Source of the DNA: Squalus acanthias
Taxonomy: Eukaryota
Direction of reading: 5' to 3'
NCBI GenBank assembly: GCA_030390025.1
Contig: CM059427.1
Coordinates: 188,480,001-188,544,000, forward strand
DNA: 64,000 nucleotides
Part shown: piece by piece, positions 10,401 to 51,016 of the stretch
Numbering within the stretch: position 1 is the stretch's first letter
Layout: every line of letters starts with the position of its first letter
The notes under the pieces: model-generated
Databases searched by the model: none
What the model was told of the DNA's origin: nothing
Seen by the model: only the letters and a program-made list of their open reading frames with translations
Program-made: the position numbers and the translations under genes

Positions 10401-11202
10401 ATGGAAGATCACATTCAATGTTCTGTTTAATAGTTTAAAATTAGGTTTGATAATCTTGACCATGATCAATGCCATGGGAGATGACCCAGTCCATCATAAT
10501 TATTATGGAAGTCTGTCTACTGATGAAATTGTTCATTTACATCAAGTACTTACCTCATCTAGTGTTACAATATTATATTAATTAAGATTTTGAAATAAAA
10601 TATTAAATTAAATGTACCATAGATAAACATTACAACAACACACAAAACTTTCAAAAACATGCATGGTAGCACTGTTAAACATTAATAGTTTCAACAAAAT
10701 TGAACCTTGTCAAAATAGATACTTTTTTTGACTAAATACCAGTTAGAGATCTGTGGCTGTCTCACACCTTGATGGTTAATGTCTCCCCAGACAGCACAGC
10801 CGAGATTGGGAACTCGCCACCTGGGGAATCTCAGGTGTGAATCTGTATTCTGCCACTCTGGTCAGGACAACACTTTCACATCCAGTTTGACAGTTTAGAC
10901 AATGAATTACCCATTTTTGAGTTTATTCACTCCCTTTTCATTCACTCAGAGCTGCTCACTTTAATTCAAAACCATTGCACCCACAAGAATCTGATGAAAA
11001 TAGTCAAATCCAGACACATTTTATGTGTCAGAAAGAACACAACGTGGACTTGGTCTTGATGGAAATATTTGGTTCTCTGGCTCCCAGTGTTTAAAGCAGA
11101 ATGTTTTCACTTTCCACATCTTTTATAGAATGACTGGCAGGAGTATTTAAATATTAAACGAGATGGAGAGAGAAACTAAAATATCAACTTTGTCCTTCAC
11201 AG

Positions 11203-11306
11203 TGAGACCACTTCCGGAGATTTGGATCATCACAGTTTCGAGCTACTTGTTGGTTAAACTGGGCGTTGCTGTTGGACTAATTTGCTGCTTGAAGAGGATG
11301 ACCAGA
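11203..11306 (+). CDS. Transmembrane exon of the Siglec-like gene, with a Lys inside the TM segment
   Basis: Acceptor tttgtccttcacag| and donor |gtaaga; phase 1 in, phase 0 out. Encodes (L)RPLPEIWIITVSSYLLVKLGVAVGLICCLKRMTR, a hydrophobic stretch followed by a basic stop-transfer. Confidence 0.85.
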
Positions 11307-11571
11307 GTAAGAATTTCTTTAAGCTTTCCAGTAAATCAGGAATTTGTGCCGAGCTGTCACTTGACATTGAGAAAACTGATGTTCGTTGAACAGATATTAT
11401 GTGGTCACAAACTGTATTTTAAAATGTCATTTAAATATTGCACATTGTACTGAATTTGAAGGAATCATCAGTTAAAGGAAGCAATTGTTCCAAATTTGGT
11501 GAAATCTTAGAGCTTTGAATATTTTTCCTGATTCAAACGGCAATAACTTCCCTGCTCCCACTTTCCATCAG

Positions 11572-11625
11572 GCTCTGAGGAAGGAATCAGGGCGATCTCG
11601 GAGGGCCATACCTGATTATCAATGA
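11572..11625 (+). CDS. Candidate terminal cytoplasmic exon A (ALRKESGRSRRAIPDYQ*)
   Basis: Pyrimidine-rich acceptor cttccctgctcccactttccatcag|; open in phase 0 up to TGA. No transcript evidence. Confidence 0.4.
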   Translation, partial: ALRKESGRSRRAIPDYQ

Positions 11626-12384
11626 ATGGACAATGCTCAAACTAGGAGCCCAATCTTTTAATATTTTTCACTGATTATCACAAATATTCTTCTTGGAAAT
11701 TAGTAACTTGAAAGTTGTCAGAAACCAATATTTGAACAGTTAAAGCACAACCAGTAAAAATTACGATTAAAGGAAGTTACTAATGTATTCTGTGACAATT
11801 AATGAGTTTGATCATTTTAACGTGTGCTGTTATTGTTGTTGCTGTGGTCTGGTGGCGCCAGAGAGCTGCAGTAGTGTTGGGGCCAAAAATGAATTTGTCG
11901 CTCTGTAAACCACTTACTCTGTGGCAGGTTTGGTTTACCTGATTTACTCCAAGTCAAATCTCAGTCAATTCAAAAGCAAAGTTTCTGTTTCGGAGATCCC
12001 TGTCATGTTTGTGTTCAAGGAAGGAGTGTTTCAAGCCTGTGTGCTTCTGGGTGAAGCGAGGCATTGTAGAATGGGAACTATTGGGGTGAGAGGCACAGAA
12101 ATGTGGTAACTAGTGGAAAGTTTGAACTGACATGAAGGATGTGAGGTAATCTGTATTGTTCAGGATGTTTACATAGAATTACGTAGAATTTACAGCACAG
12201 AAACAGATCATTCGGCCCAGCAGGTCTGTGTCGGTGTTTATGCTCCACACGAGCCTCCTCCCACCCTACTTCATCTCACCCTATCGACATATCCTTCTAT
12301 TCCTTTCTCCCTCATGTACTTATCCAGCTTCCCCTTAAATCAATCTGTACTATTCGCCTAAAACACTGCATATTATTGCGAGTT

Positions 12385-12670
12385 CCAGCGAGGAAGGAAT
12401 AGGGAAATCTCTGAGGGCCAAACCTGATTATCAATGAATGAAATAAAGACAGAAAATGAATGAACTTTGCTCACACTAGGAGCCCAATATTCTAGTTTTA
12501 AAATTTTTCATTGAATTTACTGTCACAAATATTCCTCTTGGAAATTGGAAGTTAATAACTTGATTGTCGTCAGAAACCAATATTATTTGAACAGATGTTT
12601 GAAAATGCACAACCGGTAAAAATTACAATAAACTGAACAGTACGACTGTATTTAGTGAAAATTAATGATT
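12385..12670 (+). repeat. Diverged local duplicate of ~11575-11810 (candidate exon A and downstream sequence)
   Basis: gaggaaggaat…gagggcca.acctgattatcaatgaatg…actaggagcccaat…cagaaaccaata…caacc.gtaaaaattac is present at both sites. Confidence 0.8.
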
Positions 12671-13171
12671 ATGATAAACTTTACATCAGATCACAGTTCA
12701 GGGAGGTAACAACAGAGACAGGATCAGTAGCTTTAGTAGGAGAGCATTGTTCTGTCAGAAGCAGAGTTGTCAGTTCAAGGAGGTAACTTTACGGTGAGGT
12801 CAGTCAACCACAGGGAGATCCTCTTCGAAATGTGGTCACACTGTGGCCATGAACTTCGAGCTCAATGGTGTGACCTTATTTTACATTCATACATTCATTG
12901 TAGGAAAAATCTTCCACAGTATCTTCTGTCAGTAACTGCAGTTAGTTTATCATTTTAATCGGGTCTGTTCCTTCCAATTACTGAAGCCTTTAATTGTTGA
13001 AATTATCTCATTAACACTGAGCCAGTGATGTGTGGGTCATGGTCTGTTCTGTTGCCCATTCTGTAAAATTACTCCTCTATTCCACTTCCTCTTTATCCAT
13101 CACTTCCAGTCCAGTGTTTATTATTGAAGTATAAGCTCTTTATTTAAAGCACATTTCTTGCCTCTTGTCAG

Positions 13172-13279
13172 ATATCGAACAGCGGGAATCCACACGAGGC
13201 GACAGGAAATCAAACAGATGATTCACAAGAAGCCGTCGCATTACAGACCCTGAACTCTGATACTGATCTGAGATCATAG
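13172..13279 (+). CDS. Candidate terminal cytoplasmic exon B (ISNSGNPHEATGNQTDDSQEAVALQTLNSDTDLRS*)
   Basis: Acceptor catttcttgcctcttgtcag|; 35 hydrophilic codons open in phase 0; no tyrosine. An AATAAA lies downstream at 13954. Confidence 0.5.
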   Translation: MSNSGNPHEATGNQTDDSQEAVALQTLNSDTDLRS

Positions 13280-13953
13280 AATGACTGATACAGCACAGAA
13301 GGAGGCCATTCAGCCCATCGTGCCTGTGCTCATCGGGATCTGTAGTCTCTGGAAACTAGATCAATCCAACTTGGGAAACTTCAGAAATAGATTTGTGGTT
13401 TTATTCTGGAGTTATTTTGTGGTAATTTTTTTATGTAACTAGTTTAGTTTATATCCCGACGTGTCCATTTCAATAGTTCCCAGTCTCAGTATCTGTTACT
13501 TTACTTTACAAGTCTTAACTTGCCAGGTCACTATAAGAAATTCTAATGGGTGGAAAATCGTGCTGATGTTCGGCTGAATTCCTGATCTCCACTCGTGACT
13601 GGTGAGGCTCCAGGCTGGGGACACAGTTTTATAACTGTAGGGACTGACGGAGACCCAGTGGTACAGCCGTGTGTGGAGCTTGAAGTGTTGGGACGTGGAT
13701 TTGTGACTTTGGGTCCCCAATGAGTGATCTCAGCTGGACTCTCTCTGCAGAGGAGCTGAATGGAGCTGAGCTGCTACAAATGAGAAGGAATGAAACTCGG
13801 CTCAGTAAATATGGGCGTCTCCCCTGCACCTCCCAGCACCTGTTCACACAACGAGATCGCGGAATCTCCGGAGAAGGTTGTCTCCATGCTCCCACCCAGG
13901 GAATTGTTTGCAGCAGAGCGCGACTAAAAGATTAACAGAAAAGAAACAGCATG

Positions 13954-13959
13954 AATAAA
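13954..13959 (+). terminator. Possible polyadenylation signal of the Siglec-like gene
   Basis: AATAAA about 680 nt after the stop of candidate exon B; position only. Confidence 0.25.
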
Positions 13960-14285
13960 AGTTGTGGAAAAGTAAATCTGCAAATTAAAGTGGGAATAAT
14001 TCCAGCTTTGGGAATGTTTTATTAATTTTACTTAACAATCAATTAAAAACCCTGATAATCAATTGTTTGCTGATTGTACTGATAGATTGTGATGAAGAGA
14101 TTGGTTCGGAATTGAATGGGAAAGTGTTTCCTTTTGTCATTGAATCTCTCCTGCCCTCCACCCTATCACAGACCTTCCCCTTTGTTCTTTCCTCCCCCTC
14201 TTTTCCCTGGCTCTCTACTTGCTTAAAAACTGTTAAATCTCTAACATCTGCCAGTTGTGTTGAAAGGTCATCGAGCTGAAACGTT

Positions 14286-15046
14286 GTCCCTGAAATTCCC
14301 CTCTCCGGCTTGCCGCGGGGGTAAGGATCGCGCGCGCACTTACCTACCGCGCCTGCCGTTGTGTTTTGGGCCCACGGGAACTACAGCTCCTGGGCCTGCT
14401 CCAAGTGCCGGCGCGCAGTGCTTGCGTGTCCCAGGGGCGCAGTTAGTGCGATGCGTCCCCTGGGATCACGTGGGCCATGGAGAGCCAATGGCAGCAGACC
14501 ATCTTTCATTCATAGATTTGACTGGGAGTCCTGTCAAATCTGTGAATTGAAATCAGCCCCAAAAGAACAGCTAAACTTAAAATAAATTTAAAAAAAAATC
14601 ACATTTATAAAATAACTATAGTTAAATAAATTAACCACTTCAAACAAAAATTTCAATTTTTGAAAAAATTAGAATACCTTTTAAAAGTGATTAAAATAAA
14701 CTTAACTTTCTTTAAAGTATCTAAAAAAGATAAACCTGTTGAATTTTTTTTAAATTATACTTAATTAACCACTTACCTTGTTGAAAATGGCTCATGCGCC
14801 TCCTTTTTATAAGCGTAGGTTCTTCACTACTAACCCTCCCGTAGAAACCGGAAAAAAAATCTGAGTTCGCTGCGTGCGCGCAGCCTCTACCGCACACGCG
14901 GTTCACCTAGGAACCGCCCCCTTCACCAGACCGGAAGTTCCGGTTTCCCGCACATGCGCAGTGCATGCAAGAGACCGGCACTTCGGGACGCATTACGGGT
15001 GAGTACGCACTGTGTACTCACCCGGGAAGGGCCGAATTTTTGGCCC
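14286..15046. mobile_element. Harbinger-type MITE (~750-bp family, copy 1)
   Basis: Termini gtccctgaaatt…aatttttggccc; 3-bp flanks gtt/att; body homologous to the copies at 38383, 44084 and 56622. Confidence 0.85.
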
Positions 15047-15100
15047 ATTAACTCTCTTTCTCTCTCCACAGATGCTGCCTGTCCTGCTGAGTGCTTTCCA

Positions 15101-16250
15101 TGTTAGAAATCAGGGGTGTTCAAAATGTAAATGGTTTTGCGGATAAAACTGTGACGCGAGTAATGCTGTATTTACATGATTGTATTGGAACTAGAGACAG
15201 AAAGTCTCTCAGACCAGTATTAGAATAATTAGATAGATGCGTAGAATCTGCCTGTGTTTTGGTTCCCTGCGGATCTTATAGCATTCTGCAGTGTGACGGT
15301 CATCAATAATCTTGTTTTCAAGTTAGGATTTCAACATTGTTTATGTTTCTCTAATTTGACCGACCAAGGCCCAATGTTATATTTCTTCCATTACTGCTAA
15401 TAACCATATTATAATGCTAAGGTAGGATTTTGACTTTGTTTAACAAAACTGCTTTAAAATGCGTAAGTTAACCAGTATATGAGAATAGAATAGAAGATAT
15501 CTTTGGGAATTTAATGATTCATTCCATGGTACAATAGTCTGATAATGAAATAGTTAGTTTTGCATAGCTAAAGCTGCATGAACAGCATGAACAGAAATAA
15601 CTGATAACAAGCAGTTACGAACATCTGATGGCCAAGAATGGCATGTCCGACTCCAAACTTGGGAGGATAGAGACAAGAGAGATAAGACACGAATTCCAAA
15701 GGAAGAACCTTCAGAAAGATTAAACAATAAGACAAATTGAATGAGGTAATGAGACCCCCTTTTGGGGAGGGCTTTCATCCAAGAACCAAGACAAAGAACT
15801 TGAGCTGTCATTGGTTGATGAGGTTTTAGAGGAACCTTTATAGGTTAAATGGTCTTGTCAATAACTTGGCCTCAGGCCCACCCCTAAAAAGAGAATAAAA
15901 GTGACACCCTGAGTGCTTGTCCACACAGACGGTGGAGGGGAGAGCCAGACAGAAGCTGGGCTGGTCGAACGCTCTTTTGAGAGTGATCCCATGCTCACCA
16001 ACTCAAAGGCCCTGGAGGGAGAGAGAGAGAGAGGCCAGAAGCCAGAGAACTGTTCACGCACGCCAGCCGTCTGTCCGATCGGGATCGGTACCAGCTACTT
16101 GTCACAGTCGTTTGATTTTGCTGTGTAACTAGAATGTTATATTCCATCTTAAACTCTGATTAAACACAATATACCCACCATATTTGTTTGCAGTCAATCC
16201 TGATTAATTGAAAGACTAGAGATAAGCTACTAATTGGCCTAATCTCTACA
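15101..16250. mobile_element. Solo LTR, 1150 bp
   Basis: TG…CA ends (tgttagaaat…aatctctaca); 4-bp TSD tcca on both sides; cleanly interrupts the Penelope tail. Confidence 0.85.
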
Positions 16251-16375
16251 TCCAGCATTTTCTGTTTTTATTCCTCTTTAGCCACATTGCAATAATGGGG
16301 AGATTACATTTCTCTTTCATTTTGACTCCATTCTTTTAACCATTTATGGGAATGCATCCAAGGTAATGGATCTGT

Positions 16376-16763
16376 GTACATGATAAACCCCTTCGAATCC
16401 AGCACAGCTCCAGCTCTGTACATGATAAACCCCTTCGAATCCAGCACAGCTCCAGTTCTGTACATGATAAACCCCTTCGAATCCAGCACAGCTCCAGTTC
16501 TGGACATGATAAACCCCTTCGAATCCAGCACAGCTCCAGTTCTGTACATGATAAACCCATTCAAATCCAGCGCAGCTCCAGTTCTGGACATGATAAACCC
16601 CTTCGAATCCAGCGCAGCTCCAGTTCTGGACATGATAAACCCCTTCGAATCCAGTACAGTTCCACGTTCTGGACATGATAAACCCCTTCGAATCCAGCAC
16701 AGCTCCAGTTCTGTCCATGAGAAACCCCTTCGAATCCAGCACAGCTCCAGTTCTGGACATGAC
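16376..16763. repeat. 42-bp minisatellite, ~9 copies
   Basis: Unit acatgataaaccccttcgaatccagcacagctccagttctg(t/g). Confidence 0.95.
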
Positions 16764-17389
16764 AAGACGGCTCAGCAAAAGCCTGAGATTGTTCTGTGTG
16801 AAACTTTCAGGCCTTTGATCTGCTCCTCACTTTCATAATAAACCTGGACTCACTTCCCCAGATTCTGGGTCACAAATAGTTTATCAAAATGTACAGAAGT
16901 ATTACAGTGAATGAAAATGAGGCCAAGAGAGATTCCCTCAACTGAAGTGAGGTGTGATCTGGTTGCTGAGTCGTCACCTCCTAATCCAAGTTCGGAGAGT
17001 CCCTTCTCATCCATTGTCTGCTCCAGACTGAGGAGAATCTGTGGGAGATGAGTGACTAAATATCAAACTGTGTGGGAGAGGGAGGTCATTGGGAGGGGGG
17101 ACGGCCCATCACCACCTCAGGTGCCAGTGCTGCCCTCATCCTGAGAATAAATATAAAAAGGATCCTTTTTCAGTGTGTATTTTCCAGAAGTTTCCACCAC
17201 AGCCTGCATTCTGCAGGGAAATAAAGTTTCTTCTCATCTTAACTCTGTCCTCAGGTTTTATATTTTTACCCAGCTCCTGTAGTTTTATATTCATAATTCA
17301 ACTTAAACTACCTGCTCACACCTAAATTGTCAGTCACTCTCATCATTTTAAAGATTTCGATCATGTCATGTGTCCCCCTTAATCTTCTT

Positions 17390-18160: not shown

Positions 18161-18364
18161 TCAGTGAAAAGACCTCCATCTGTCACTCACTAGACTTTGA
18201 CATAACCAGAAGGGAACATTCACTGGGTTTAGGATCCTTCCTGTTTCTGTGCAGATGTTACCGTTTTTAACCAGCTTCCACTGTTTCATTTTTACACGTA
18301 CTATTTTAAAATAAAATCTACAAAAATCTGACTACATTGAAAATCATTCCTTAGAACTCTATTT

Positions 18365-21500: not shown

Positions 21501-21699
21501 CTGTGTGATTCTGAAATGCAGACAGTCTAATTCTGCTAATTATGGAGTTTGGACAGATTGCAGAAGGATGCACCAGGGCTTGATCCTAAACAGGAGGAAT
21601 AAGGCAGAAACCTTCTAATACTAACCGATCGTGTGACCTTCCCAGGCAAGAAAAACAGCCCAGGTTGAAGTCTGCATTACCCTCCCTTTGGGAAAGAAC

Positions 21700-30037: not shown

Positions 30038-30125
30038 ATGAGGCTACGATTTTTCTGCAGCAAAATGCCAGCTGGTTTGATGTTCAGTTTCTTTGTGTTT
30101 CTACTTCTGTCTGTTTTCATACAAA
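30038..30125 (+). pseudogene. Leader (signal-peptide) exon of the four-Ig V-C2-V-C2 gene
   Basis: Acceptor tttcttacag| at 30015; ATG at 30038 (alternative 30065). Encodes MRLRFFCSKMPAGLMFSFFVFLLLSVFIQ; phase-1 donor |gtaagt. Confidence 0.75.
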
Positions 30126-33700: not shown

Positions 33701-34047
33701 GAAACACAAATGATATGTATTGTTTGGATAAGGGAGATGGCATTCCATTAAAAGAACTGGACAATCCTGGGAATGGCCCTGTTGTCTGGGAATGGAAATC
33801 ACACTCAGGGCAAGAAATGCAGCGGCTGGTTACTTTTCACAAAGTGAGTTCGGACTGGTGGGTCACGCAATGGAACAATGACTTTGGAAATAAGGAGTTG
33901 TACAAAAATGCATGGCAGGATGGGATGGTGTTTCCATTGATCTGAGTATTACAAATCCTACATTTAAATTTGCAGGCTCGTTCATCTTGAGTTAAACACA
34001 GCCGAGTAATAAAACCTTGAAACAGTATGAAATATTTGTGCTCAAAG
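33701..34047 (+). pseudogene. D1 (V-like Ig) exon, with a frameshift and a premature stop
   Basis: AG/GT bounded. …GPVVWEWKSHSGQEMQRLVTF… shifts frame near 33910-33920 into …WDGVSIDLSITNPTFKFAGSFILS*TQPSNKTLKQYEIFVLK; TAA at 33993-33995. Confidence 0.8.
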
Positions 34048-35644: not shown

Positions 35645-35914
35645 TTGAGTCAAGTCCACAGAGTGCTGTGGTGGGCAGTGACGTTACACTCAGCTGTACC
35701 ATCTCCAAACTCTCAGATACAGTCAGTCTTCAATGGAAACAGAGAGACTCATCTCAGCAGAACAGGAGCAACACTGATCAGATCCGACTAAATAACACAG
35801 TCTATCTGATAGTCAAACATGTTGCAGTAGAGGATAAGGAGTTGTACGCGTGTGAAGTGCAGGAAGATGGATCCATTATTCTCACTGGAAAAGCAGATTT
35901 TTCTGTGGCCCAGG
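35645..35914 (+). pseudogene. D2 (C2-type Ig) exon, open
   Basis: tttttcacag|…|gtaagt; 270 nt, phase 1/1. Encodes VESSPQSAVVGSDVTLSCTIS…LQWKQ…LIVKHVAVEDKELYACEV. Confidence 0.9.
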
Positions 35915-37421: not shown

Positions 37422-37769
37422 CTCGATATTTTCATCAGCCTGCCTACACATGTTATCGGTCGAGTACAGTTCACAGTGAAGTTCACCTGATGGATGATTC
37501 TCGTTATTTCTGGAGATATCGTAAAGCTGCCTGGATTTGGAAGTCACATCACTCTCCAAATCAAGAGATACAGATAGCTTCTTATTTCAGATCTCACCGT
37601 ATCGATCTAAACATGACGTACTTTGGGAATCGAATAAATGCAATAAAGAGATACTTTGACAGGAACATCATTGTACAGATTGTCCCTGTGCTGTTTGATG
37701 ATGCAGGAGATTTCACATTAACTGTCAATTCAGAAAAACTAGTGACCATTACACTAATCACAGTTAAAG
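37422..37769 (+). pseudogene. D3 (V-like Ig) exon, open
   Basis: ttttcctattacag|…|gtaggt; 348 nt, phase 1/1. Encodes …EVHL…AAWIWKS…YFGNRI…VQIVPVLFDDAGDFTL…ITLITVK. Confidence 0.85.
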
Positions 37770-37853: not shown

Positions 37854-38109
37854 TCACAGCTGAACCATCTGATGCAGTGACTGAGGGAGACACCGTTACC
37901 CTGACCTGCTGTGTCTCTGATGTGATTTGTTTGGATCAGTAGTGATGGCAAAACTGTTGAAGAAAAAACATTGAATGGATCGAATGGGGAAGAGAAATCA
38001 TTGAGACTGATTATTCAGAAAGCTGACAGAGGCAGTGGGAACTGGATATGTGTTTTGTTTCAACAAAACAGTTCCAAGATTATAATCCCGTACTATCTGG
38101 AAATCGTGA
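37854..38109 (+). pseudogene. D4 (C2-type Ig) exon, with a frameshifting deletion
   Basis: VTAEPSDAVTEGDTVTLTCCVSDV shifts frame at ~37925 into FVWISSDGKTVEEK…SLRLIIQKADRGSGNWICVLF…YYLEIV; 256 nt (not a multiple of 3); donor |gtaagt. Confidence 0.88.
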
Positions 38110-38382
38110 GTAAGTGTTTATGTTGTAAACTGATAACCAGCAGCACTGGTACAAACTGATGCAGAATAAATAGACAGTGCAACTCAATGAAATGTAATTC
38201 TTTGTTCACTGTAATATAGCAGAAGCTCTGTTACTCAGGGTGTTGGTAAAAAGACCCACAAAGACCGACGTTGTCTTTTTACTTGAGCAGTAATGAAGTT
38301 TTTGTTGCTTCAGGTGCAATACCTTTATTTCTTCAATCAGCTTGCAAAGCACTTTGCAAGCAAAGTAGATTAAAGAGATATT

Positions 38383-39113: not shown

Positions 39114-39674
39114 ACTAACTTTTCTAAGCACAAAATGTCTCTTTTTATTGGATTCTTGTCCCCCAAGTAAAATTGAATCTGCCTCTTCTCCCTTGATTGG
39201 ATTCCTTCTGTCACCTGACTTAACATGACACCTCCCTTTTAGTAACTTTCCATTGCCTCTAGACTGAACCGAGGCCCAGGCTATCCAGCACGCAGCATAA
39301 CATGTTTAACGTGTCATCCGAACAACAGTTTATTGGACAGTGTAGCACTCCCTCAGTACTGCATCAAGTGCTTGCCTCGATTATGTGCTCACCTGCCTGG
39401 AGTTGGAATTGAACCCACAACCTCCTGACTCAGAGGTGAGATTGCTACCACTGAGTCACAGCTGACTCTAGGTGGAGGACTCCAGACCGCACAGATCAGT
39501 CACTGAGTGCCCTGGCGGGGGGAGACAGCTTTACGGTGGACACACCTTGTTGCCAAAGCCCTTCACCTGAGGTCCCGGATTAAACATTTGGGATGAGTAA
39601 GCCTGGTGCACTTGAATATCTAGAATCTTGACGTGATGTATCACGAGTTGCCCTGTGTAGATTATTTTTTTTTT

Positions 39675-42116: not shown

Positions 42117-42427
42117 CCACCACGTGAAAGCAGATTCCCACCATTTAATTCTCAAATTTAAAATTCTCATCATGTTCAATCCCTCCATGTCCTCGCCCCT
42201 CCCTATCTCTGTAATCTCCCCCAGCACCACAACCAATGTTCCAGTTAATCTGCGCCACGGTGCAGTAGTCTGGAGGTCCCGCCCAGGACACTTGCCACTT
42301 TTAATGGGAAATTTGAATGGGCCGCGCACTCCCCCAAAAAATGACATCAAACATTGCCTGCAATCCTCTGTATTCCTCCAATTCTGGCCTCTTGTGCATC
42401 CCAGATTTTGTTTGCTCCATCATTTAT

Positions 42428-43337
42428 GGCCAAAGCCGGAATTTTGCTGGTGCTCAGAGGGCGGGTTCGGAGGCGGGTCTGCTGTCAAAATATAAAAAAT
42501 TGACAGCGGGTCGGGAGCCCGCTGTCAACCCGCCTCCATGTCAGTTTCCCAAGTGCTGGGTCTGTCTACGCTTTACAGACCCGACACCAAGCAGCAGGGG
42601 AGCCAATTGATAGAGTTAAAAGTTTGTTAAAAGGTATTTAAGCAGCATTTTACCATGTACTTACTATTTTTCCAACTTTTTCATGAGGTTCCCCATGCTT
42701 GGGGATCACGTCAGGTGAGTAGGTCGGGTTTTCAATAACTCTCCATTCCTCTGAATAGTTGACAGCTGCAGAAGCTGGAGCCTTCAGGGTTTGTAATACA
42801 CTTTTCAGCTTTATGTGGGTTGGAAGTGTTTGGAGTAAACTGTCTATCCACTGTCACCTCATTGGAGCAAGCTCTCTCACCATTGACAGATCGCTTCTGT
42901 CATCTCAACTTCAGCTGCCATCTATTATCTATTCCAGCAGCATCGGTGCCCTTCAATAAATCTCACCTTGGTCCTTAGAATCCCACCACGATCAGCCCCA
43001 ACACCAACATCACCAGGCACAGCAGCATCAACAACAACAATACCAACCTACTCCACAATCACCTGATGCTGCACAGGACACAGGGCATCAGCATCCGACC
43101 ACATTGCTGCCCGGGAGGCCAGCAATGGCATCACCATGGCCAGATTTACTTCACTTGATGCTGTACACCTTGGCTGCCACAAGATCCACCAGGTTGGCAC
43201 CACCCCACACCAGCACCATAAAGCATCCCTACAATGCCCAAGCCATTCCTTTCACACTCATCACCATTGTGGAGGGGTGGGGTGGGGGGGGGGGGCGGCG
43301 GTACCGTTATGTCTCATCATTCACTACAACTCACTAA
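42428..43337 (+). mobile_element. Harbinger-derived fragment
   Basis: TIR-like start (gccggaattttgc…ggcgggttcggaggcggg) also seen inverted at ~31300-31488; body homologous to 26965-28097. Confidence 0.65.
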
Positions 43338-44083
43338 GACACTTCCTTTTTCCTCAACCGAGGATTTCCCTCTACTGTGGTTTACATTGCCCTCGACCGT
43401 GTCCGTTCCATTTCCCGCACTTCTGCTCTCACCCCTTCCCCTCCCTCCTAGAACTACGATAGGGTTCCCCTTGTCCTCACCTTTCACCCCACCACCCTCC
43501 ACATTCAACGGATCATCCTCTGCCATTTCCACCACCTCCAGCATGATCCCACCACCAAACACATCTTCCCCTCCCCTTTTATCATTCCAAAGGGACCGCT
43601 CCGTCTGCGATACCCTGGTCCACTCCTCCATTACCCCAACATCACTTCCCCTTCCCACGGCACATTCCCGTGCAAGCACAGGAGATGCGATACCTGACCT
43701 TTTACCTCCTCCCTTCCCACTGTCCAGGGCCCCAAACATTCCTTCCAGGTGAAACAGCGATTTACTTGTACTTCTTGCAATTTAGTATATTGAATTCACT
43801 GCTCACAATGTGGTCCCCTCTACATTGGGGAGACCAAGCGCAGATTGGGAGACCGCTTTGTGGAACACTTCCATTCAGTCCGTAAGCGTGATCCCGAGCT
43901 TCCGGTCGCCTGTCACTTTAATTCTCCGCTCCACTCCCACTCTGATCTCTCTGTCCTCGGCTTCTTACACTGTTCCAATGAAGATCAACATAAGCTCGAG
44001 GAACAGCACCTTATCTTTCAATTAGGCACTTTACAGCCTTCTGGACTCAACATTGAGAGTATAATCTCGGCCCAATATATATT

Positions 44084-44827
44084 GGCCCAGAAATTGATCT
44101 CGCTCTGTTCCCGCGGGGGTAAGCCTTCCCCGCGATGTCTCACCTCGCTTATGCTTTTTCTGATCCAGCTCGCACGAACTTGATGTTCCAGACATCAGCT
44201 GTGCTGGGCTTGCGTATCCCAGCGGCGCAGTTAATTCGTGCGAGCTGTGGGATCACGTGACTCAGTTAGAGCCAATGGCAGCACACCATCTTCCATTCAT
44301 AAGTCTCACAGCATGGCCGTGAGACTTATGAATCTTACACCCCCCCAAAATAACAGCTAAACCTCAATTAAATTTAAAAAAAAACCCATCACATTAATAA
44401 AATAAGTATAGTTAATTAAATTAACCATTTTAAATAAAAAAATAAATTTTTGAAAAAATTTAAAATCTTTTAAAAAGTTATAAAAATAAACTTACCTGTC
44501 TTTAAAGTCTATAAAAAAGATATACCTGTAAAAAAAAATTCAAAAAAATACTTAATTCACTACTTACCTTCTTAAAAGCGGGTCTTACTCCTCCTTTTTA
44601 CATTTCCAAAATCTTCCCTACTTACCTGCGCGTCCACAGCATGAAGTGCACAGCGTGCGCGCAGCCTGTAGCGCGCACGCGATGCACTCAGGCCCCGCCC
44701 CCTTTTCGGAAGAGCAATTGCCGGTTTTCAGCGCATGCGCAGGGCATGCAGAAAACCGGCAATTGGAGTGGGAATATGCGAGAGTATGCAGTGCGTACTC
44801 TCGCGTCCCGGGATCAATTTTCGGCCC
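44084..44827. mobile_element. Harbinger-type MITE (copy 3)
   Basis: TIRs ggcccagaaattgatc / gatcaattttcggccc; TSD att/att. Confidence 0.9.
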
Positions 44828-45104
44828 ATTTTTTTTCATTTTTTTTCTTTTGTCCCGTTTTTCTTCTCTCACTTGGTAGCTGTTGATAATTCTGCCATTG
44901 CCATTTACATCTCATGTTGAGTCATCTTTTGTTTCTTAACTTGTCCCATTATCATTTCCTTTTGCCTTGCACCATCATCCCTTTTATCTTTTACTCTCTC
45001 CTGCCTTCCAGCCTATCACAAACCTTTCACTTGTTTTTTCCTCCCCTCCTCCCTTTCCCTGTCCGACAGGTGCTTAAAAATCTGTTACTTCTCTAACTTT
45101 TTCC

Positions 45105-45141
45105 AGTTCTGATGAAGGGCCCTCGACATGAAACGTTGACT
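45105..45141 (+). ncRNA. Minimal type I hammerhead ribozyme motif of the Penelope 3' end (stem II degenerate)
   Basis: agtt-CTGATGA-agggccctcgacat-GAAA-cg-TT-gact; palindromic stem III (aacgtt); stem I agtt/gact. Confidence 0.6.
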
Positions 45142-46876
45142 CTGTTTCTCTCTCCACGATGCTGCCTAACCTGCTGAGTGTTTCCAGCATTTTCTGTTGT
45201 TATTCAAGACACTTCCAAAGGTGCACACAGATCTGGCCAAGAACGTAAAGTGTTGAATATAAAGATTTCAATGTCTGACAACACATTAACAGAAACTTTA
45301 CATGAACATCGGCTAAAAGACACAAGTCCCTACCCTTGTGTGTTGTGTATGATTGCACTAGGATGAGGTTGAGTGTGGCTTTGCAGTAATGTTTCGTGAT
45401 CTACTGAGATCATTGAAAGGTTTGCGCCACTGTCGCCGGGTCCTCCTGACGACATCCATGCTTGTGCCCTCCTGTGCAATGTGCAACCAGGCTGCATAGG
45501 TCTCCTGGGGAGGTCTCTTCCGCCCGCTGTGACGCTTTCCATAAGCATATGGATGGAGTCATGGGAGAGCCTGGGTGCAGCCATGCACCTCTCTGCAGAG
45601 CATGTCAGTGTTTGCAGCACCTCAACACTGACATCACAACTGCCAAAATCAATTTGGGCATGGCCCCTTTAAGGAAACTGGCTGATGACGCATCATCAAA
45701 TGACGTCATCAGACCCGCTTCCTTTTAATTGGCCGGGAACTCGCTGGGCGGGCTTAACAAGCCCAATCAGGGGAAAGTCGTGTGGGAAGCTGGCATGGAG
45801 ACAGGAGCGGGACCGCGACCCGCCATCGACCCCGGCCGCCACACTCCCACCTCGGTAGGTGAAATCTTCAGCTGTCGAGCCCCTAAGCTCTGGAATTCCT
45901 TCTCTAAAACTCTCTGACTCTCTACCTCTCTCTCCTCCTTGAAGATGCTCCTTAAACCTACCGCTTTGACCAACCTGTCCAAATATCTCTTATGTGTATC
46001 GGTGTCAAATTTTGTCTGATAACGCTCCTATGATGGCCTTAGAATGGCTGGTGTTTAAATACTAAACGAGATGGAAATTGCAACTGGAAATGTCAACTTT
46101 GTCCTTCACAGTGAGAGCGAGACCCCCTCCGGACACTTGGGGGGCGATTGTCTGACGTCGGAGGAGGCGGGTTTGGTGTCGGGAAAGGCGGGAAAATTAG
46201 ATTCAAAGAGGTCGGGTTCGGAACCCGACTCCAACCCGCCTCCGTGGGATTTTGCCGGTGCTGGTTTTGGAGGTTGGGAAATGTTCCCGCCTCCAGCTGG
46301 CCATTGCGCTCATTAACTTCATTAAATGCTTTTTAAGGGCCTCTCTAAACCTATTTTGAGAGACCCTCGTGAATTTCCCAGCATTTCGGCGTGCTCCACA
46401 GAACTCCTGAACCACACCAGGTAAACCTGGCGGGTTAACTCGTGGGTGGCCTCCTCACTGCTGCAGGTCTAACAAGACATCGTTTACTGTGGCAAGGAAT
46501 ACTTGCAGGTGCCAGACCTTGGCTTTAAAAGGACTCTGAGTACTTTTAAAAGGCCTTCCGAAGTCGGAGGTGCTGCAGCTTGACTCCATCAACTGTGGGA
46601 CCTCCTTGGAAGACCCTCTCCCTGCTTGCAATGAGCGCTTCCCCAAAGGAGGCATCTACAAGCAGCATGGGAACCATTCATTTTCTTTCACCATGGACCT
46701 CAGATGAGGATGCGGACCATCCAGGGCAGCAGCAGAACCAGGCAGCTCAGCAGCAACATTAGCAGGAGCCCCAACCTCCTGCTCAGCCACCTGATGCTGC
46801 ACAGGGCAGAAGGCACCAGCTCATTGAGGGACCTCGCCGCAGGAGATACCCCCGACAGAGGGTTTACAGACAGAGG

Positions 46877-47946
46877 ATGAGCTACCTCAACATGAGTGAG
46901 CAGCAGTGCCAAAGGAAGCTGAGACTTTCACAGGAGGTTGTCCGAGAGATCTGCAGCCTGCTGCAGCAAGACCTGGTGCCCAGAGGAACGGGTGGACACC
47001 CCTTAATAGTGGCTGTCAAAGTCACTACTGCACTCAACTTCTTTGCCTCAGGCTTCATCCAGGGATCATCGGCAGACATCAGCGGCATCTCCCAGTCAGC
47101 CGCCCACAGGTGCATCACCCAGGTTACCGATGCCCTTTTTTCTGAGGCGCACAATGACATCCAGTTCACAAGGGATCAAGGAAGTATAACCGCCCGTTCG
47201 GTTGGATTCGCAAATATGGCAGGCATGCCAATGGTGCAGGGCGTCATAGACTGCACACATGTGGCTCTTAGGGTGCCCCATCACAACCCAGCTATCTTTG
47301 TCAACCGAAAGGGCTTCCACTTCCTCAACGTACAGCTGGTGTGTAACCACAAGAAGGAGTTCTTGCATGTTTGCGCCAAGTTCTGTGGTAGTTGCCATGA
47401 TTCTTTCATCCTGTGGCACTCTATTGTTCCTCCACTTTTCAATCCACCAAATCAACTTAACGGATGGCTCCTTGGTGACAAAGGCTATCCCCTGAAGAAG
47501 TGGCTAATGACGCCGATCAGGAGGTCAGCTAACGAGGCTCAAGAGCGCTACAACACCAGCCACACTTCGACCAGGTCCCTAATAGAGCAGACCATTGGGT
47601 TGTTGAAGATGCGCTTCCGTTGCCTTGACCGATCAGGTGGAGCCCTGCAGTATACAGGGTCTCCAAAATGGTCGTGGTCTGCTGTTCACTGCACAACATC
47701 GCACAGCGTCGTGGCTTGCAGCTTCCTGATGAGCAAGTGGCTCAGTTCCGGCCCTCCTCAGATGAAGATGAGGAGGAGGAGGAGGAGGCTGAGGAGGAGA
47801 ATCTGGAGGAGGAGGAGGAAGAGCAGGAGGAGGAGGAGCAGGAGGAGGTCAGAGTGCCGGTGTATCGACCAGCGGCAGCGGCAGCACGCGAGCACGTGGC
47901 TGCCAGGGATGCAAGGGATGAACTTTTCATGGCCAGATTTGCATAG
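46877..47946 (+). pseudogene. Harbinger (HARBI1-like, DDE_Tnp_4) transposase, frameshifted near the C-terminus
   Basis: GVIDCTHV…NRKGFH.LNVQLVC…GSCHDSFI…LLGDKGYPL…[15 protein letters not shown]; shifts frame at ~47655 into [12 protein letters not shown] and a poly-Glu tail. Confidence 0.92.
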
Positions 47947-48295
47947 TTTGCCCAAGTTGGCAGATGTCCTTGGCTCCATCCTAGGACTTCATTGACAATG
48001 GACATGAATCTCTGGCCTCCTTTCACTCAGGCCACCAACCAGACAACGCAAGTGTGGTGGTGCCCGCAATGTGGAGCTTCCTGAGGCGAAAGAACAGATG
48101 GCATAATGCCAACATTTTGGCGTCAAATCATTTTAATCCTTTCCAACAGGGATGGCATTTCATGAATACACAGAGACAGTCTCTCAATCTGCACACTGAT
48201 CTGGAGGTTATATCCCTTGCCAGCTGTACCCTCACAGCCTTGGTTTCTTTGGCAGGCCTCTTCCTCCGAGATGAGTGGAAGAGCACCTCCATGCT

Positions 48296-49522
48296 ATCTA
48301 ACAGAAAGCAAAGAGTTGGGATAAATGGTTCATTCTCAGACTGGCAATCAGTAACTAGTGGTGTTCCACAGGGGTCAGTGCTGGGTCCCCAACTCTTTAC
48401 AATCTATATTAACGATTTGGAGGAAGGGACCAAGTGTAACATATCAAAATTTGCAGATGATACAAAGATGGGAGGGAAAGTAGTGAGTGAGGAGGACATA
48501 AAAAACCTGCAAGGGGACATAGACAGGCTAAGTAAGTGGGCAGAGATTTGGCAGATGGAATACAACACTGGAAAGTGTGAGGTGATGCACTTTGGCAGGA
48601 AAAATCCTAGAGCAATTTATAATCTTAATGGCAAGAAACTGGAGAGTACTGAAGTGCAAAGGGATCTGGGGGTCCTGGTGCACGAAACTCAAAAGTTTAG
48701 TATGCAGGTGCAGCAAGTGATTAAGAAGGCAAATGGAATGTTGGCTTTCATTGCTAGGGGGATAGAATATAAAAATAGGGAGGTATTGCTTCAGTTGTAC
48801 AAGGTATTGGTGAGACCGCACCTGGAATACTGCATACAGTTTTGGTGTCCTTACTTAAGGAAAGACATCCTTGCTCTCGAGGCAGTGCAAAAAAGGTTCA
48901 CTCGGTTAATCCCGGGGATGAGGGGGTGGTCATATGAGGAGAGGTTGGGTAGATTGGGACTCTACTCATTGGAGTTCAGAAGAATGAGAGGCGATCTTAT
49001 TGAAACATATAAGATTGTGAAGGGGTTGGATCGGGTGGATGCGGGGAGGATGTTCCCGATGACGGGTGAGACTAGAACTAGGGGACATAGTCTTAGAATA
49101 AGGGGCTGCTCTTTCAAAACTGAGATGAGGAGGAACTACTTCACTCAGAGGGTGGTAGGTCCATGGAATATGCTGCCACAAAAAGCTGTAGAAGCTACAT
49201 CATTAAATAAATTTAAAACAGAAATAGACAGTTTCCTAGAAGTAAAGGACATTAAGGGTTACGGGGAGCGGGCAGGAATTTGGACATGAGTCTAGGTTCG
49301 GATCGGTCATGGCCCTGTGGGTAGTGGAGCGGGCCCAGGGACCGTGTAGCCTGATTCTGCTCCTATTTCGTGTGTGCAATTCTGTTAGATGCAGGAGATG
49401 GTTCTGTGATAGTAGATAGTAGATTGGCGGTTAGGATCAGATCAGCCATGATCGTATTGAATGGCGGAGCAGGCTCGAGGGGCCGATTGGCCTACTCCTG
49501 CTCCTATTTCTTATGGTCTTAT
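48296..49522 (+). mobile_element. Young 5'-truncated CR1 nested in the Harbinger
   Basis: Open RT C-terminal half (RKQRVGING…GVPQGSVLGP…KFADDTK…VRPHLEYC) to 49289, followed by the CR1 3' UTR. Confidence 0.95.
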
Positions 49523-51016
49523 GTATGCTAGCTGTCACCCCCTCAAACAACATTTGCAGCGCCTCATCTGAGAGCCTCGGGTAGGCCCTTGCCTTGGAAT
49601 TGGACATAGGTATCTCAAAAGATGTTGGAGGTGGTGCAGGAGAAGCAGAAATGCTGTGGAATGAGCCAAGGGAGCAAGAGCCATAAAATCAGACTGGAAA
49701 AGTGCTGTCAACAGAGGCGACTTTCAGTCCCAGAACACTAATTGAGCACGGGCATCCCACACCTCTGAAATCAAGTGGACAATCATGGGAAAATCGCAAC
49801 ATTTTGAAACCTATCAGTGGAGGCGAGTTTCAGACACACCCAAACTGAAACCCGCCTCCATCTCACCTCCAGTGGGAAAATCGCCCCCTTGGATCCGGAC
49901 ACTTGTATCCTGGCACTTTCCGGGTACTTGTTTGTTCAGCTGAGCGCTGCTGTCGGACTAATTTGCTACTTGAGGGGAGTGAGCGGAGTAAGCATTTAAA
50001 AATACTTTTTGCTGTTTTTTAGTAATTCAGTAACCAGTGCACAGATGTCACTCGACATTTATAGAACTGGTTTGCACCATTCCAAAGCCTTTTGGGATGA
50101 ACTGAGGTCATGAAAGGCGCTATATCAATACAAATACTTTCTTTTTTTTTTACAGGCTATTTTCATGTGTTTACAGCTTTTCATAATGTTTGATGAATTT
50201 CTGCTTTGGAACTAATTTTAAAAGTCTCGATAATCATTTGTTTGCTAATTGTACTTGTTATCAATTGTAATAAAAAGGTTGGTTTGGAATGGAATGGGTT
50301 GGTATTTCCTATTGAACCGCACTCTAATAATGGGGAAGAGTAACTTTCCTTTTGAGTTCTATTCTCCGAGCCATTCATGGAAATACATCCAAGGCAATGG
50401 ATCTGTGGGCTCGATAAACCGCTTCGAATCCAGCACAGTACATAATAAAATGTATCTGCTAAAACTAGAGATTATTCTGTTTGAAAGCCTCCTGTGATCA
50501 CAGAAACATCGACTCACTTTAGTGGGGTCTGGATCAGAAACAATTGATCAAGGTTTCCCCAGCGGTTTGATGAGTTTATCCATAAAACTAACAACAACTT
50601 ACGATTATATAACGCCTTTAACATAGAGAAACCTCCCAAGGTGCAACGAAGAAGATATTAGGAGGGCTGACCAAAATCTTGGTCAAAGAGATGGGTTCCA
50701 ATAGAGATGGAGAGGCGGAGGGATTTAGGGAAGGAATTCCAAGCATGAATTTGCGCCGCCTGCTATTTTGGATAATTAGGTTGTGCTGGTGGCCGGAGTG
50801 CATGACGCGTTTTGCAGGAGCCCTTCTCAATTTCCGAATCCCGCAACGCTTCATATTAAAAGAACACGGGCTGCTCCCCCCCTCCCGATTGGCATCGCTC
50901 CCACCGATCGGTATGTCTTCCCCTGACCAGGCCTCCAATCGACCCTCTTTCCCCCCCTTCCGACCCAGATCACTGTCGATCCCCCCACCATGGCCCGAGG
51001 CCCAATCGCCCCACTA

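What the first reader, a model, noticed from the sequence alone, without database searches (positions are those of the whole stretch)
11120..50075. Two different Ig-receptor ectodomains end in paralogous copies of one TM module (Lys versus Gln): a possible exon-shuffled or paired receptor system
Seen: the TM exon after the Siglec-like C2 array (11203-11306) and the TM exon after the V-C2-V-C2 gene (46112-46139 + 49892-49987) are homologous. The proteins read RPLPEIWIITVSSYLLVKLGVAVGLICCLKRMTR and RPPPDTCILALSGYLFVQLSAAVGLICYLRGVSG. They share acceptor context, exon phases (1/0), ~70 nt of upstream intron (11128-11202 vs 46041-46111), downstream intron (11330-11390 vs 50020-50075) and further 3' blocks (11825-12260 vs 53535-54090; 16330-16410 vs 50365-50440). 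The ectodomain exons show no visible nucleotide similarity. Known: paired immune receptors differ by a charged TM residue, and phase-1 Ig exons shuffle easily. Inference: a TM/tail cassette was duplicated and joined to different ligand-binding ectodomains, making one gene a chimera.
Basis: partly seen in the sequence, partly recalled or inferred. Interest (0 to 1): 0.82.

Follow-up and report, generated by a model that had tools for sequence, protein, structure and literature searches.

The report
Shared activating membrane cassette, one copy dead
Two shark immune-receptor genes end in copies of the same lysine-bearing membrane-anchor exon: one copy is the wrecked end of a dead gene, and the other is intact, expressed and apparently spliced to an unrelated Siglec-type ectodomain.

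Summary
TM exon A (11203-11306) and TM exon B (46112-46139 + 49892-49987) are homologous, with about 75 nt of intron on each side.

The interpretation needs correcting.

- A profile of the two exons searched against 1.84 billion proteins found 7 real carriers. All 7 have four-Ig (V-C2-V-C2) ectodomains like gene B.
- The module is the activating 3' cassette of a large, unnamed cartilaginous-fish family of paired receptors. 25 of 81 fetched members carry it, all 25 with Lys. At least 24 carry a neutral TM with ITIM tails.
- Copy B is therefore native to its gene. That gene is dead: two frameshifted Ig exons, a stop codon, a frameshifted TM exon split by a 3.75 kb Harbinger transposon, and no tail exon. 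Its Gln is a change from the family Lys, not a pairing partner.
- Copy A is intact. RNA-like assemblies of related species splice it to a tail exon at 13172 in 3 of 4 runs. One contig in 1 of 4 runs splices the MAG/Siglec-type C2 exon (7467) to it.
- So the Siglec-like gene, not the V-C2-V-C2 gene, is the likely chimera.

Other scan notes flag the four-Ig family elsewhere on this piece of the genome.

The parts
1..9257 (+). Tandem array of about 3.2 copies of a 2.9 kb unit. Each unit holds a degraded C2-type exon, an intact MAG/Siglec-type C2 exon, a 66-nt minisatellite and a LINE fragment.
   Evidence: Self-BLAST: 1-6341 vs 2862-9257 at 96.8%. Reading frames.
6310..6507 (+). C2a half-domain ORF (copies also at 500-697 and 3361-3558). 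The first half of the domain lies in another frame and holds stops, so this is a probable pseudo-exon.
   Evidence: Pfam C2-set_2 at 7e-5 on the second half only. Frames.
1321..1602 (+). C2b exon, copy 1 (phase 1 to 1, 282 nt).
   Evidence: Identical to copy 3 except for 1 nt.
4270..4551 (+). C2b exon, copy 2.
7186..7467 (+). C2b exon, copy 3: a MAG/Siglec-type C2 Ig domain. Its donor at 7467 was seen joined to 11203.
   Evidence: Pfam Ig_3 1e-10 and I-set 3e-9. Best solved-structure match is myelin-associated glycoprotein at 1.4e-17; Siglec-8 scores 1.3e-9. Joint 7467>11203 with GT..AG ends in X2.
11126..11202 (+). Intron flank upstream of TM exon A, homologous to 46040-46111.
   Evidence: 62/71 ungapped identity.
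11203..11306 (+). TM exon A (phase 1 to 0, 104 nt), with a Lys in the middle of the helix.
   Evidence: Sequence. 28/34 identical to the P0011 module. Expressed peak and spliced joints.
11307..11378 (+). Intron flank downstream of TM exon A, homologous to 49988-50069.
   Evidence: 55/72 ungapped identity.
13172..13279 (+). Tail exon A: 35 codons with no tyrosine, stop TAG at 13277-13279, followed directly by an abundant repeat.
   Evidence: Joint 11306>13172 with GT..AG ends in X1, X2 and X3. Sequence and translation. 88% identical to the P0011 tail.
14000..14136 (+). Non-coding block Y downstream of cassette A, homologous to 50171-50314.
   Evidence: 73% identity.
16271..16887 (+). Non-coding block Z, homologous to 50306-50551. 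In A it is interrupted by an 84-nt minisatellite at 16375-16765.
   Evidence: 76% and 62% identity.
11815..12261 (+). Block X, similar to 53525-54101 but out of order. Its 3' part is an abundant repeat.
   Evidence: depths.
30038..30125 (+). Gene B leader exon.
   Evidence: 60% identity to P0002 residues 1-36. Donor site.
33701..34047 (+). Gene B D1 exon: 347 nt (not a multiple of 3), frameshift near 33930, in-frame TAA at 33993-33995.
35645..35914 (+). Gene B D2 exon, 270 nt, open.
   Evidence: 82% identity to P0002. Pfam Ig_3 and V-set. Boundaries.
37422..37769 (+). Gene B D3 exon, 348 nt, open, of the subtype without the second Cys.
   Evidence: 57% identity to P0001 against 45% to P0002. 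Boundaries.
37854..38109 (+). Gene B D4 exon: 256 nt, frameshift at about 37925.
46040..46111 (+). Intron flank upstream of TM exon B.
46112..46139 (+). TM exon B, left piece. It ends in the TTG target site.
46140..49888 (+). PIF/Harbinger DNA transposon inserted in TM exon B. It has terminal inverted repeats at 46140-46152 and 49876-49888 and a transposase ORF at 46763-47992. A LINE reverse-transcriptase ORF is nested at 47985-49286.
   Evidence: Pfam DDE_Tnp_4 at 4.7e-29. Inverted repeats. TTG at 46137-46139 and 49889-49891.
49892..49987 (+). TM exon B, right piece. It carries the second copy of a 14-nt direct duplication and has Gln where the family has Lys.
49988..50551 (+). Non-coding sequence downstream of TM exon B, collinear with A's blocks (intron flank, Y, Z). 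It holds no tail exon.
53525..54101 (+). Second copy of block X.

Best explanation
The window lies in a cluster of a large cartilaginous-fish family of four-Ig-domain (V-C2-V-C2, LAG-3/CD4-shaped) paired receptors.

Family members end in one of two ways. One is a neutral TM with a long tail carrying two ITIM-like motifs. The other is the cassette seen here: a phase-1 TM exon with a central Lys plus a short tyrosine-free tail exon.

By analogy with KIR2DS, Siglec-14 and TREM2, the Lys most likely recruits an Asp-bearing ITAM adaptor. This step is inferred, not shown.

Copy B is the native TM exon of a family member that has decayed into a pseudogene. Copy A (TM 11203-11306 plus tail 13172-13279) is an intact family cassette that is transcribed and spliced.

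The only coding exons upstream of copy A in the window are a recently amplified array of MAG/Siglec-type C2 exons in the same phase, and one RNA contig joins the last of them to TM exon A.

Gene A is therefore most likely a hybrid: Siglec-type ectodomain exons placed in front of a four-Ig-family activating cassette. Splicing works because both sides are phase 1.
For: The module is native to the four-Ig family:
- The TM profile gave 10 hits in 1.84e9 proteins. Seven have one full-length match, each behind domains that map onto gene B's exons.
- 25 of 81 fetched family proteins carry the module, from sharks, rays and skates, and all 25 have Lys.
- P0002 and P0015 are 422/435 identical up to the membrane and then diverge into Lys-TM with a short tail versus neutral TM with ITIM motifs.
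- TM A is 28/34 identical to the P0011 module, and tail A 88% to the P0011 tail. TM B is 23/29 identical to the P0001 module.

B is dead:
- Its D1 exon is 347 nt and holds a TAA; its D4 exon is 256 nt.
- A Harbinger element sits inside the TM exon, and the exon is 124 nt once the element is removed.
- No tail exon is found anywhere else in the window.

A is alive:
- The joint 11306>13172 (GT..AG) occurs in 3 of 4 runs, with contig depths 218.6, 75.8 and 148.6, against about 10 in the surrounding intron.

A is a chimera:
- The joint 7467>11203 (GT..AG) occurs in X2 at depth 89.5, which equals the whole depth at 11203 in that run.
- Its 30-letter side is what a 31-mer graph would give when the C2b end has several successors; the assembler's word length is my assumption and comes from no call. 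The three C2b copies are identical there.
- C2b's best solved relative is MAG/Siglec-4 at 1.4e-17.
- No four-Ig exon lies between 1 and 11200.
Against: - The C2b>TM joint rests on one contig in 1 of 4 runs, with 30 letters on its short side and 'between: not known'.
- X1 and X3 show the TM>tail joint, but no C2b>TM joint appears among the listed rows (251 joints were not shown).
- X1's TM-tail contig simply stops at 11202.
- The runs are from related organisms, about 3-4% diverged in introns, not from the window's own individual. Their RNA nature is inferred from the spliced contigs.
- The window starts inside the C2 array, so what lies upstream is unseen. It could be a Siglec V-set exon or four-Ig exons.
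- No database protein with a Siglec-type ectodomain plus this module was found. Those searches have limited reach.
- The upstream C2a exon of each array unit looks degraded.
- Adaptor coupling is inferred only.
Confidence: 0.62

Rival explanations
1. TM A and tail A are the ordinary 3' end of a four-Ig family gene whose D1-D4 exons lie upstream of the window. The Siglec-type C2 array would be a passenger inside its last large intron, and the 7467>11203 joint a minor exonisation or aberrant splice.
For: - The cassette is typical of the family.
- The window begins inside the array.
- Only 1 contig in 1 of 4 runs shows the C2b joint.
- Database models in this family show odd domain orders, such as P0001 and P0010, so splicing or annotation in these clusters is messy.
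Against: - In X2 the joint contig's depth (89.5) equals the whole depth at 11203, so in that run it is the main form.
- In gene B the four Ig exons and leader span only 8 kb. Here at least 11 kb upstream holds none.
- C2b has clean phase-1 splice sites in all three copies.
Confidence: 0.17
2. Cassette A is an orphan left by deletion of its four-Ig ectodomain. It is transcribed by read-through from the upstream Siglec-type gene, and the hybrid RNA makes no working protein.
For: - The neighbouring family member B is a pseudogene, so decay is common here.
- The C2a exons are degraded.
- Unspliced contigs cross the acceptor at 11203 (records 4 and 18).
Against: - The TM and tail exons are open, keep the Lys and the conserved tail motif, and are 82-88% identical to intact relatives.
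- Precise GT..AG splicing and exon depth 10-20 times the intron depth are seen in three runs from two organisms.
- The frame is kept across 7467>11203.
Confidence: 0.13
3. One reading: two live receptors with different ectodomains form a functional pair that differs by Lys versus Gln in a shared TM, and the V-C2-V-C2 gene is the one that acquired a foreign cassette.
For: The two exons are homologous and differ at that residue.
Against: - Gene B has at least five disabling lesions.
- All 25 relatives have Lys.
- The cassette is native to the V-C2-V-C2 family.
Confidence: 0.03

Closest known systems
Paired activating/inhibitory Ig receptors with a Lys or Arg in the TM (KIR2DS/KIR2DL, Siglec-14/Siglec-5, LILRA/LILRB, CD300; named from recall)
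   Same: Near-identical ectodomains carry either a neutral TM with ITIM motifs or a charged TM with a short tail (P0002/P0015). The Lys is central in the helix and the tail has no tyrosine.
   Different: The ectodomain is a four-Ig V-C2-V-C2 unit found only in cartilaginous-fish records in my search. The adaptor is unknown. In this window, the member with its own family ectodomain (B) is dead.
CD4 / LAG-3
   Same: Four Ig domains of V-C2-V-C2 shape, with a D1 that lacks the Cys pair. The family profile's best solved match is LAG-3 at 7e-11; CD4 scores 2.6e-6.
   Different: CEA scores the same as LAG-3 (7.6e-11). The family has no Cx(C/H) or (F/Y)xxL(D/E) tail motif, the motifs that define shark CD4 and LAG-3 in PMC10768021 (abstract and section 3.2 read). 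No source names any member CD4 or LAG-3. It is a multigene family with Lys-TM and ITIM forms.
Siglecs (MAG/Siglec-4, CD33-related)
   Same: The C2b exon's best solved relative is MAG, followed by Siglec-8. It is a phase-1 Ig exon. An activating form with a charged TM resembles Siglec-14, -15 and -16 (recalled).
   Different: The sialic-acid-binding V-set domain is not in the window. The TM and tail are not Siglec-derived; they come from the four-Ig family.
Lungfish CD4/LAG-3 hybrid gene (PMC10768021, section 3.5, passage read)
   Same: A young hybrid in which the ectodomain of one receptor is joined to the tail of another within a tandem cluster.
   Different: That hybrid joins two members of one family. 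Here the two parts come from unrelated Ig families.
PIF/Harbinger DNA transposons
   Same: A DDE_Tnp_4 transposase, short terminal inverted repeats and a 3-nt target duplication.
   Different: The target triplet is TTG, not the usual TWA (recalled). The candidate Myb-like second ORF gave no Pfam hit.

Membership tests
Cartilaginous-fish four-Ig paired receptor family (unnamed) | TM module with a central Lys ([VI]KL) | tested here: met
   Copy A has VKL and is 28/34 identical to P0011. Copy B matches the module (23/29 to P0001) but has Gln, against Lys in 25 of 25 relatives.
Cartilaginous-fish four-Ig paired receptor family (unnamed) | Short tail exon with the ...ALQTLNSD.DL motif | tested here: met
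   Present for A at 13172-13279 and spliced to the TM exon. No such exon for B anywhere in the window.
Cartilaginous-fish four-Ig paired receptor family (unnamed) | Leader plus D1-D4 ectodomain upstream of the cassette | tested here: inconclusive
   Gene B has all five exons, two of them frameshifted. Cassette A has none within the 11.2 kb upstream. What lies before the window start is unseen.
Siglec family | N-terminal V-set domain with the sialic-acid-binding Arg | not testable with these tools
Siglec family | C2-set domains of Siglec type | tested here: met
   The C2b exon scores 1.4e-17 against MAG and 1.3e-9 against Siglec-8. Contactins follow at 3e-12.
CD4/LAG-3 family | Cytoplasmic Cx(C/H) motif (CD4) or (F/Y)xxL(D/E) motif (LAG-3) | tested here: not met
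   Tail A has no Cys, His-pair or Tyr/Phe motif of that form. The family's long tails carry IHYGSI- and VIYAQI-type motifs instead. The motif definitions come from PMC10768021 (abstract, section 3.2).
CD4/LAG-3 family | Sequence relatedness of the four Ig domains | tested here: inconclusive
   In the profile search LAG-3 scores 7.1e-11 and CD4 2.6e-6, but CEA scores 7.6e-11 and PD-L1 2e-8. With a single sequence LAG-3 reaches only 0.01.
Adaptor-coupled (DAP12/FcR-gamma type) activating receptors | Basic residue in the TM and a short tail without signalling tyrosines | tested here: met
Adaptor-coupled (DAP12/FcR-gamma type) activating receptors | Physical association with an ITAM adaptor | not testable with these tools
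   This needs co-expression and co-precipitation experiments.
PIF/Harbinger transposon (insert in exon B) | DDE_Tnp_4 transposase, terminal inverted repeats, 3-nt target duplication | tested here: met
   Pfam at 4.7e-29. 13-nt inverted repeats at 92%. TTG on both sides.

The most novel reading that the evidence does not exclude
A shark has built a working activating Siglec-type receptor by capturing the Lys-TM/short-tail cassette of an unrelated family. The donor is a so far undescribed, pan-chondrichthyan family of LAG-3-shaped four-Ig paired receptors. This would be a natural inter-family cassette swap caught with its intron homology still visible, next to a decayed donor-family gene.
Probability: 0.4. 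Interest if true: 0.7.

Novelty: new variant of a known kind. Interest (0 to 1): 0.55.

Why it matters
Paired activating and inhibitory receptors are thought to diversify by swapping signalling ends, but clear cases between unrelated Ig families are few. This locus shows three things:
- the donor family, with its Lys cassette conserved in sharks, rays and skates;
- a dead native copy of the cassette;
- a live copy spliced, at least sometimes, to Siglec-type exons.

It also points to a large receptor family, about 80 database proteins in some twenty species, that sources call 'uncharacterized'. I found no paper on it in four full-text searches. If the hybrid protein is real, it is a testable example of how a lectin-type receptor becomes adaptor-coupled.

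Tried and rejected
- **Homology further upstream of the TM exons.** I compared A 9257-11130 with B 38110-46045 at word size 7 and found only a 37-nt chance-level hit. B's interval is almost all transposon, so the breakpoint cannot be placed.
- **Coding potential in blocks Y and Z.** None is conserved.
- **A tail exon for B.** Neither a nucleotide nor a peptide search of the whole window found one.
- **Inhibitory-type TM or ITIM exons in the window.** tblastn with 81 family proteins at E 1e-3 hit only seven places, none of that type.
- **An annotated Siglec-plus-module protein.** Region searches with P0002 435-509 and P0023 432-506 collected only 42 and 27 candidates and returned 2 and 4 family proteins. 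They missed known members such as P0021, so the blank is weak.
- **The other profile hits.** Three of the 10 hits (P0003, P0006, P0009) matched through 9-16 short stretches. I set them aside as repeats without inspecting them.
- **Chance similarity.** Rejected on the BLAST E-values.
- **A 12-nt target duplication.** Reading TCCGGACACTTG as the target duplication would leave exon B in frame. I judged this less likely than TTG plus an older 14-nt duplication, because the transposase is Harbinger-type and the inverted repeat ends at 49888. It is not excluded.
- **Not attempted.** Structure prediction, the protein atlas and RNA-family tools were not used because the question did not need them.
- **Expression of gene B.** Not tested; the single read-laying run went to gene A.
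- **Closed supplements.** The supplements of PMC10768021 (shark CD4/LAG-3 alignments) were not available and may bear on the CD4/LAG-3 comparison.

Full report
**1. The observation**

TM exon A (11203-11306) follows the acceptor ttcacag, starts in phase 1 and ends in phase 0 before gtaaga. The same acceptor context and the same donor type occur at 46112 and 49987.

Self-BLAST of the window links 11143-11207 to 46051-46116 (86%, E 9e-14) and 11213-11378 to 49894-50069 (72%, E 3e-19). Local alignments extend this to 11126-11225 vs 46040-46140 and 11213-11378 vs 49894-50069.

Ungapped identity is:
- 62/71 in the upstream intron;
- 18/22 and 63/81 in the two exon parts;
- 55/72 in the downstream intron.

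So the exon is no better conserved than its flanks. The translations share 14 of 31 aligned residues. The homology is real and lies at the DNA level, introns included.

**2.

The 3.75 kb between the two exon pieces is not an intron. It has these features:
- 13-nt terminal inverted repeats at 46140-46152 and 49876-49888, with a second perfect 12-nt pair just inside;
- a TTG on each side, at 46137-46139 and 49889-49891;
- an ORF at 46763-47992 that matches the DDE_Tnp_4 transposase of PIF/Harbinger elements at 4.7e-29;
- a nested LINE reverse-transcriptase ORF at 47985-49286.

Taking out the element and one TTG leaves an exon of 124 nt. A phase 1-to-0 exon needs 3n+2. The excess is a 14-nt direct duplication that neither copy A nor any relative has, so the exon appears to have been frameshifted before the insertion. 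If the 12-nt repeat were itself the target duplication, the exon would have been intact at insertion. I think this less likely for a Harbinger element.

**3. The further blocks**

A more sensitive comparison shows that the homology continues downstream in collinear order:

| Copy A | Copy B | Identity |
|---|---|---|
| 14000-14136 | 50171-50314 | 73% |
| 16271-16407 | 50306-50438 | 76% |
| 16719-16887 | 50413-50551 | 62% |

None of these blocks has a conserved reading frame. Relative to B, copy A holds two large extra stretches, 11378-14000 and 14136-16271.

The block 11815-12261 vs 53525-54101 (83-86%) is out of this order. Its 3' part is an abundant repeat with a third, inverted copy at 32752-32961 and enormous depth in all four runs. 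Its 5' part has only two copies in the window and ordinary depth in the DNA-like run X9. I cannot say whether it belongs to the duplication.

**4. Who owns the cassette**

A profile of TM exon A and the right piece of TM exon B (A1) was scored against 1.84 billion representative proteins and gave 10 hits at E 0.001 or better.

- Three hits (P0003, P0006, P0009) matched through many short stretches. I set them aside without inspection.
- The other seven each match the whole module once near the C-terminus.
- Mapped back on the window, these seven proteins cover gene B's leader, D1, D2, D3 and D4 exons as well as both TM exons.
- P0002, from Pristiophorus japonicus, is 82% identical to B's D2 and 75% to its D4. 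Its TM is closest to copy A (29/39), and its tail maps onto 13172-13279.

A full search with P0002 found 78 proteins at E 1e-5 or better, from sharks, rays, skates and one chimaera. Almost all are called 'uncharacterized', and none is called CD4 or LAG-3.

Of the 81 family proteins I fetched (84 minus the three set aside):
- 25 carry the module and all 25 have Lys at the [VI]KL position;
- at least 24 instead have an uncharged TM followed by IHYGSI- and VIYAQI-type ITIM-like motifs (my pattern missed some).

P0002 and P0015 are 422/435 identical up to '...YYLEPS' and then diverge completely into these two kinds of end. This is a textbook activating/inhibitory pair. The cassette is therefore the family's own activating end, conserved in sharks, rays and skates.

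That is not what is found; they use this one.

**5. Gene B is a pseudogene**

Exon boundaries were read from the sequence.

| Exon | Coordinates | State |
|---|---|---|
| Leader | 30038-30125 | open |
| D1 | 33701-34047 (347 nt) | frame changes near 33930; TAA at 33993-33995 where relatives have Gln |
| D2 | 35645-35914 (270 nt) | open |
| D3 | 37422-37769 (348 nt) | open |
| D4 | 37854-38109 (256 nt) | frame changes at about 37925, where relatives have several more residues |

Added to these are the damaged TM exon and the absence of any tail exon in the rest of the window.

The interval 38110-46040 is almost wholly repeats and LINE ORFs. D4 and TM exon B were therefore once close neighbours, as expected for a native last-but-one exon.

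B's Gln stands where all 25 relatives have Lys, and its closest module, P0001 (23/29), has Lys. So the Gln is best read as a change in a dead or dying copy. The missing Cys pair in D1 is a family trait, not decay (consensus).

**6. Cassette A is alive**

Four runs were laid on 7350-13349. All are assemblies of related organisms. Unique intron contigs differ from the window by about 3-4%.

- X9 behaves like DNA: even depth in all 30 bins and no exon-to-exon splice joint among the listed rows.
- X1, X2 and X3 behave like RNA. Their depth over 11150-11349 is 164, 77 and 114, against about 10 around it.
- All three RNA-like runs contain a contig that joins 11306 to 13172 with GT..AG ends.

The tail exon begins after ctcttgtcag and encodes 35 residues without tyrosine. 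It ends at TAG 13277-13279, just before an abundant repeat. It is 88% identical to the tail of P0011.

**7. Is gene A a chimera?**

Upstream of cassette A the window holds no four-Ig exon. It holds instead about 3.2 tandem copies (96-97% identical) of a 2.9 kb unit. Each unit has two exons:
- a C2-type exon whose first half is out of frame and holds stops;
- an intact 282-nt phase 1-to-1 exon, C2b, whose best solved relative is myelin-associated glycoprotein/Siglec-4 (1.4e-17), with Siglec-8 at 1.3e-9.

In X2 one contig joins 7467 to 11203 with GT..AG ends. Its depth (89.5) equals the total depth at 11203 in that run.

Its short side is 30 letters. A 31-mer graph should give exactly that if the end of C2b has several successors (the next C2b copy, the intron, the TM exon). 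The assembler's word length is my assumption and comes from no call. The three C2b copies are identical over their last 238 nt.

Against this:
- it is one contig in 1 of 4 runs;
- X1's TM-tail contig stops at 11202;
- 251 joints were not listed;
- no database protein of this composition turned up.

The frame is kept across the junction.

**8. Mechanism**

Shown:
- cassette copies are related by DNA duplication;
- the family uses the cassette natively;
- B is decayed;
- A is spliced to its tail exon;
- a C2b-to-TM splice exists in at least one sample.

Inferred:
- the Lys recruits an Asp-bearing ITAM adaptor, as in KIR2DS, Siglec-14 or TREM2 (recalled knowledge);
- the hybrid arose when Siglec-type exons and a family 3' end were brought together in the cluster, by deletion, unequal crossing-over or segmental duplication, with phase-1 compatibility allowing splicing.

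Database models in which the module follows a D1-, D3- or D4-type domain (P0001, P0008, P0002) are in line with such modularity. They may also be annotation artefacts.

**9. Comparison with what is known**

The family profile's best solved match is LAG-3 (7.1e-11), but CEA scores the same (7.6e-11) and CD4 lower (2.6e-6). With a single sequence the match to LAG-3 is only 0.01.

Shark CD4 and LAG-3 proper are defined by Cx(C/H) and (F/Y)xxL(D/E) tails and by their position in the genome (PMC10768021: outline and abstract, section 3.2, passages). This family has neither motif. That paper does not mention a Lys-TM multigene family in the parts I read. [quoted passage not shown]

Four full-text searches gave no paper on the family. 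Their other hits I saw only as listings.

**10. Context from the scan (unverified leads)**

- Notes on the same piece of the genome, within about 2 Mb on either side, describe clusters of four-Ig and eight-Ig 'CD4/LAG-3-like' receptors with ITIM or activating ends.
- The eight Siglec notes shown, of 87, lie on other pieces.
- If that holds, the Siglec-type exons are the newcomers in this cluster.
- Notes on this window had already called gene B a pseudogene, the C2 array a recent amplification and 11203-13279 an adaptor-coupled end. My tests agree with all three.

**11. Verdict**

The 'Lys versus Gln pair' is not real. The chimera idea survives with the roles reversed and with moderate support. 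Interest is moderate: 0.55.

Noticed in passing
window 854-1190, 3737-4139, 6686-7055: A 66-nt minisatellite sits inside each 2.9 kb array unit, with a different copy number in each unit.
   Followed up: no
window 11203 (run X9): The DNA-like run of a related organism has GAGAGC inserted behind 11203. Copy B carries the same 6-nt difference, and relatives carry it as '...VRARP...'. Copy A's shorter form is therefore a lineage-specific in-frame loss.
   Followed up: partly
window 16375-16765: An 84-nt minisatellite has grown out of the block that is homologous to 50413-50438.
   Followed up: no
window 51017-51894: A 62-nt minisatellite, about 14 copies at 89-94% identity, reads as a proline-rich ORF.
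   Followed up: no
window 24447-25978 (- strand): Two ORFs lie here. One has a Myb/SANT-like DNA-binding domain (Pfam 1.6e-7), as in the second gene of Harbinger elements. This may be a second Harbinger copy.
   Followed up: no
window 57472-59034 and 39583-42151 (-): Long LINE reverse-transcriptase ORFs. The first is 521 codons and open. A related fragment sits in each unit of the C2 array (for example 7653-8453, 79% identical).
   Followed up: no
window 43794-44180: An ORF with a GIY-YIG-like motif, of the kind I recall from Penelope-like elements. This is recalled and not tested.
   Followed up: no
window 61688-63970: Long ORFs of 385 and 375 codons that look like the gag and protease region of a retroelement. 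Scan notes place an env-like gene just beyond the window end.
   Followed up: no
proteins P0002 / P0015 (Pristiophorus japonicus): Their ectodomains are 422/435 identical, and they end in a Lys-TM with short tail versus a neutral TM with ITIM tail. This is a very young activating/inhibitory pair in the family.
   Followed up: partly
proteins P0012-P0022: Eight-Ig members carry a doubled V-C2-V-C2 ectodomain. Models such as P0001 and P0010 have permuted domain order. These may be real variants or merged gene models.
   Followed up: no
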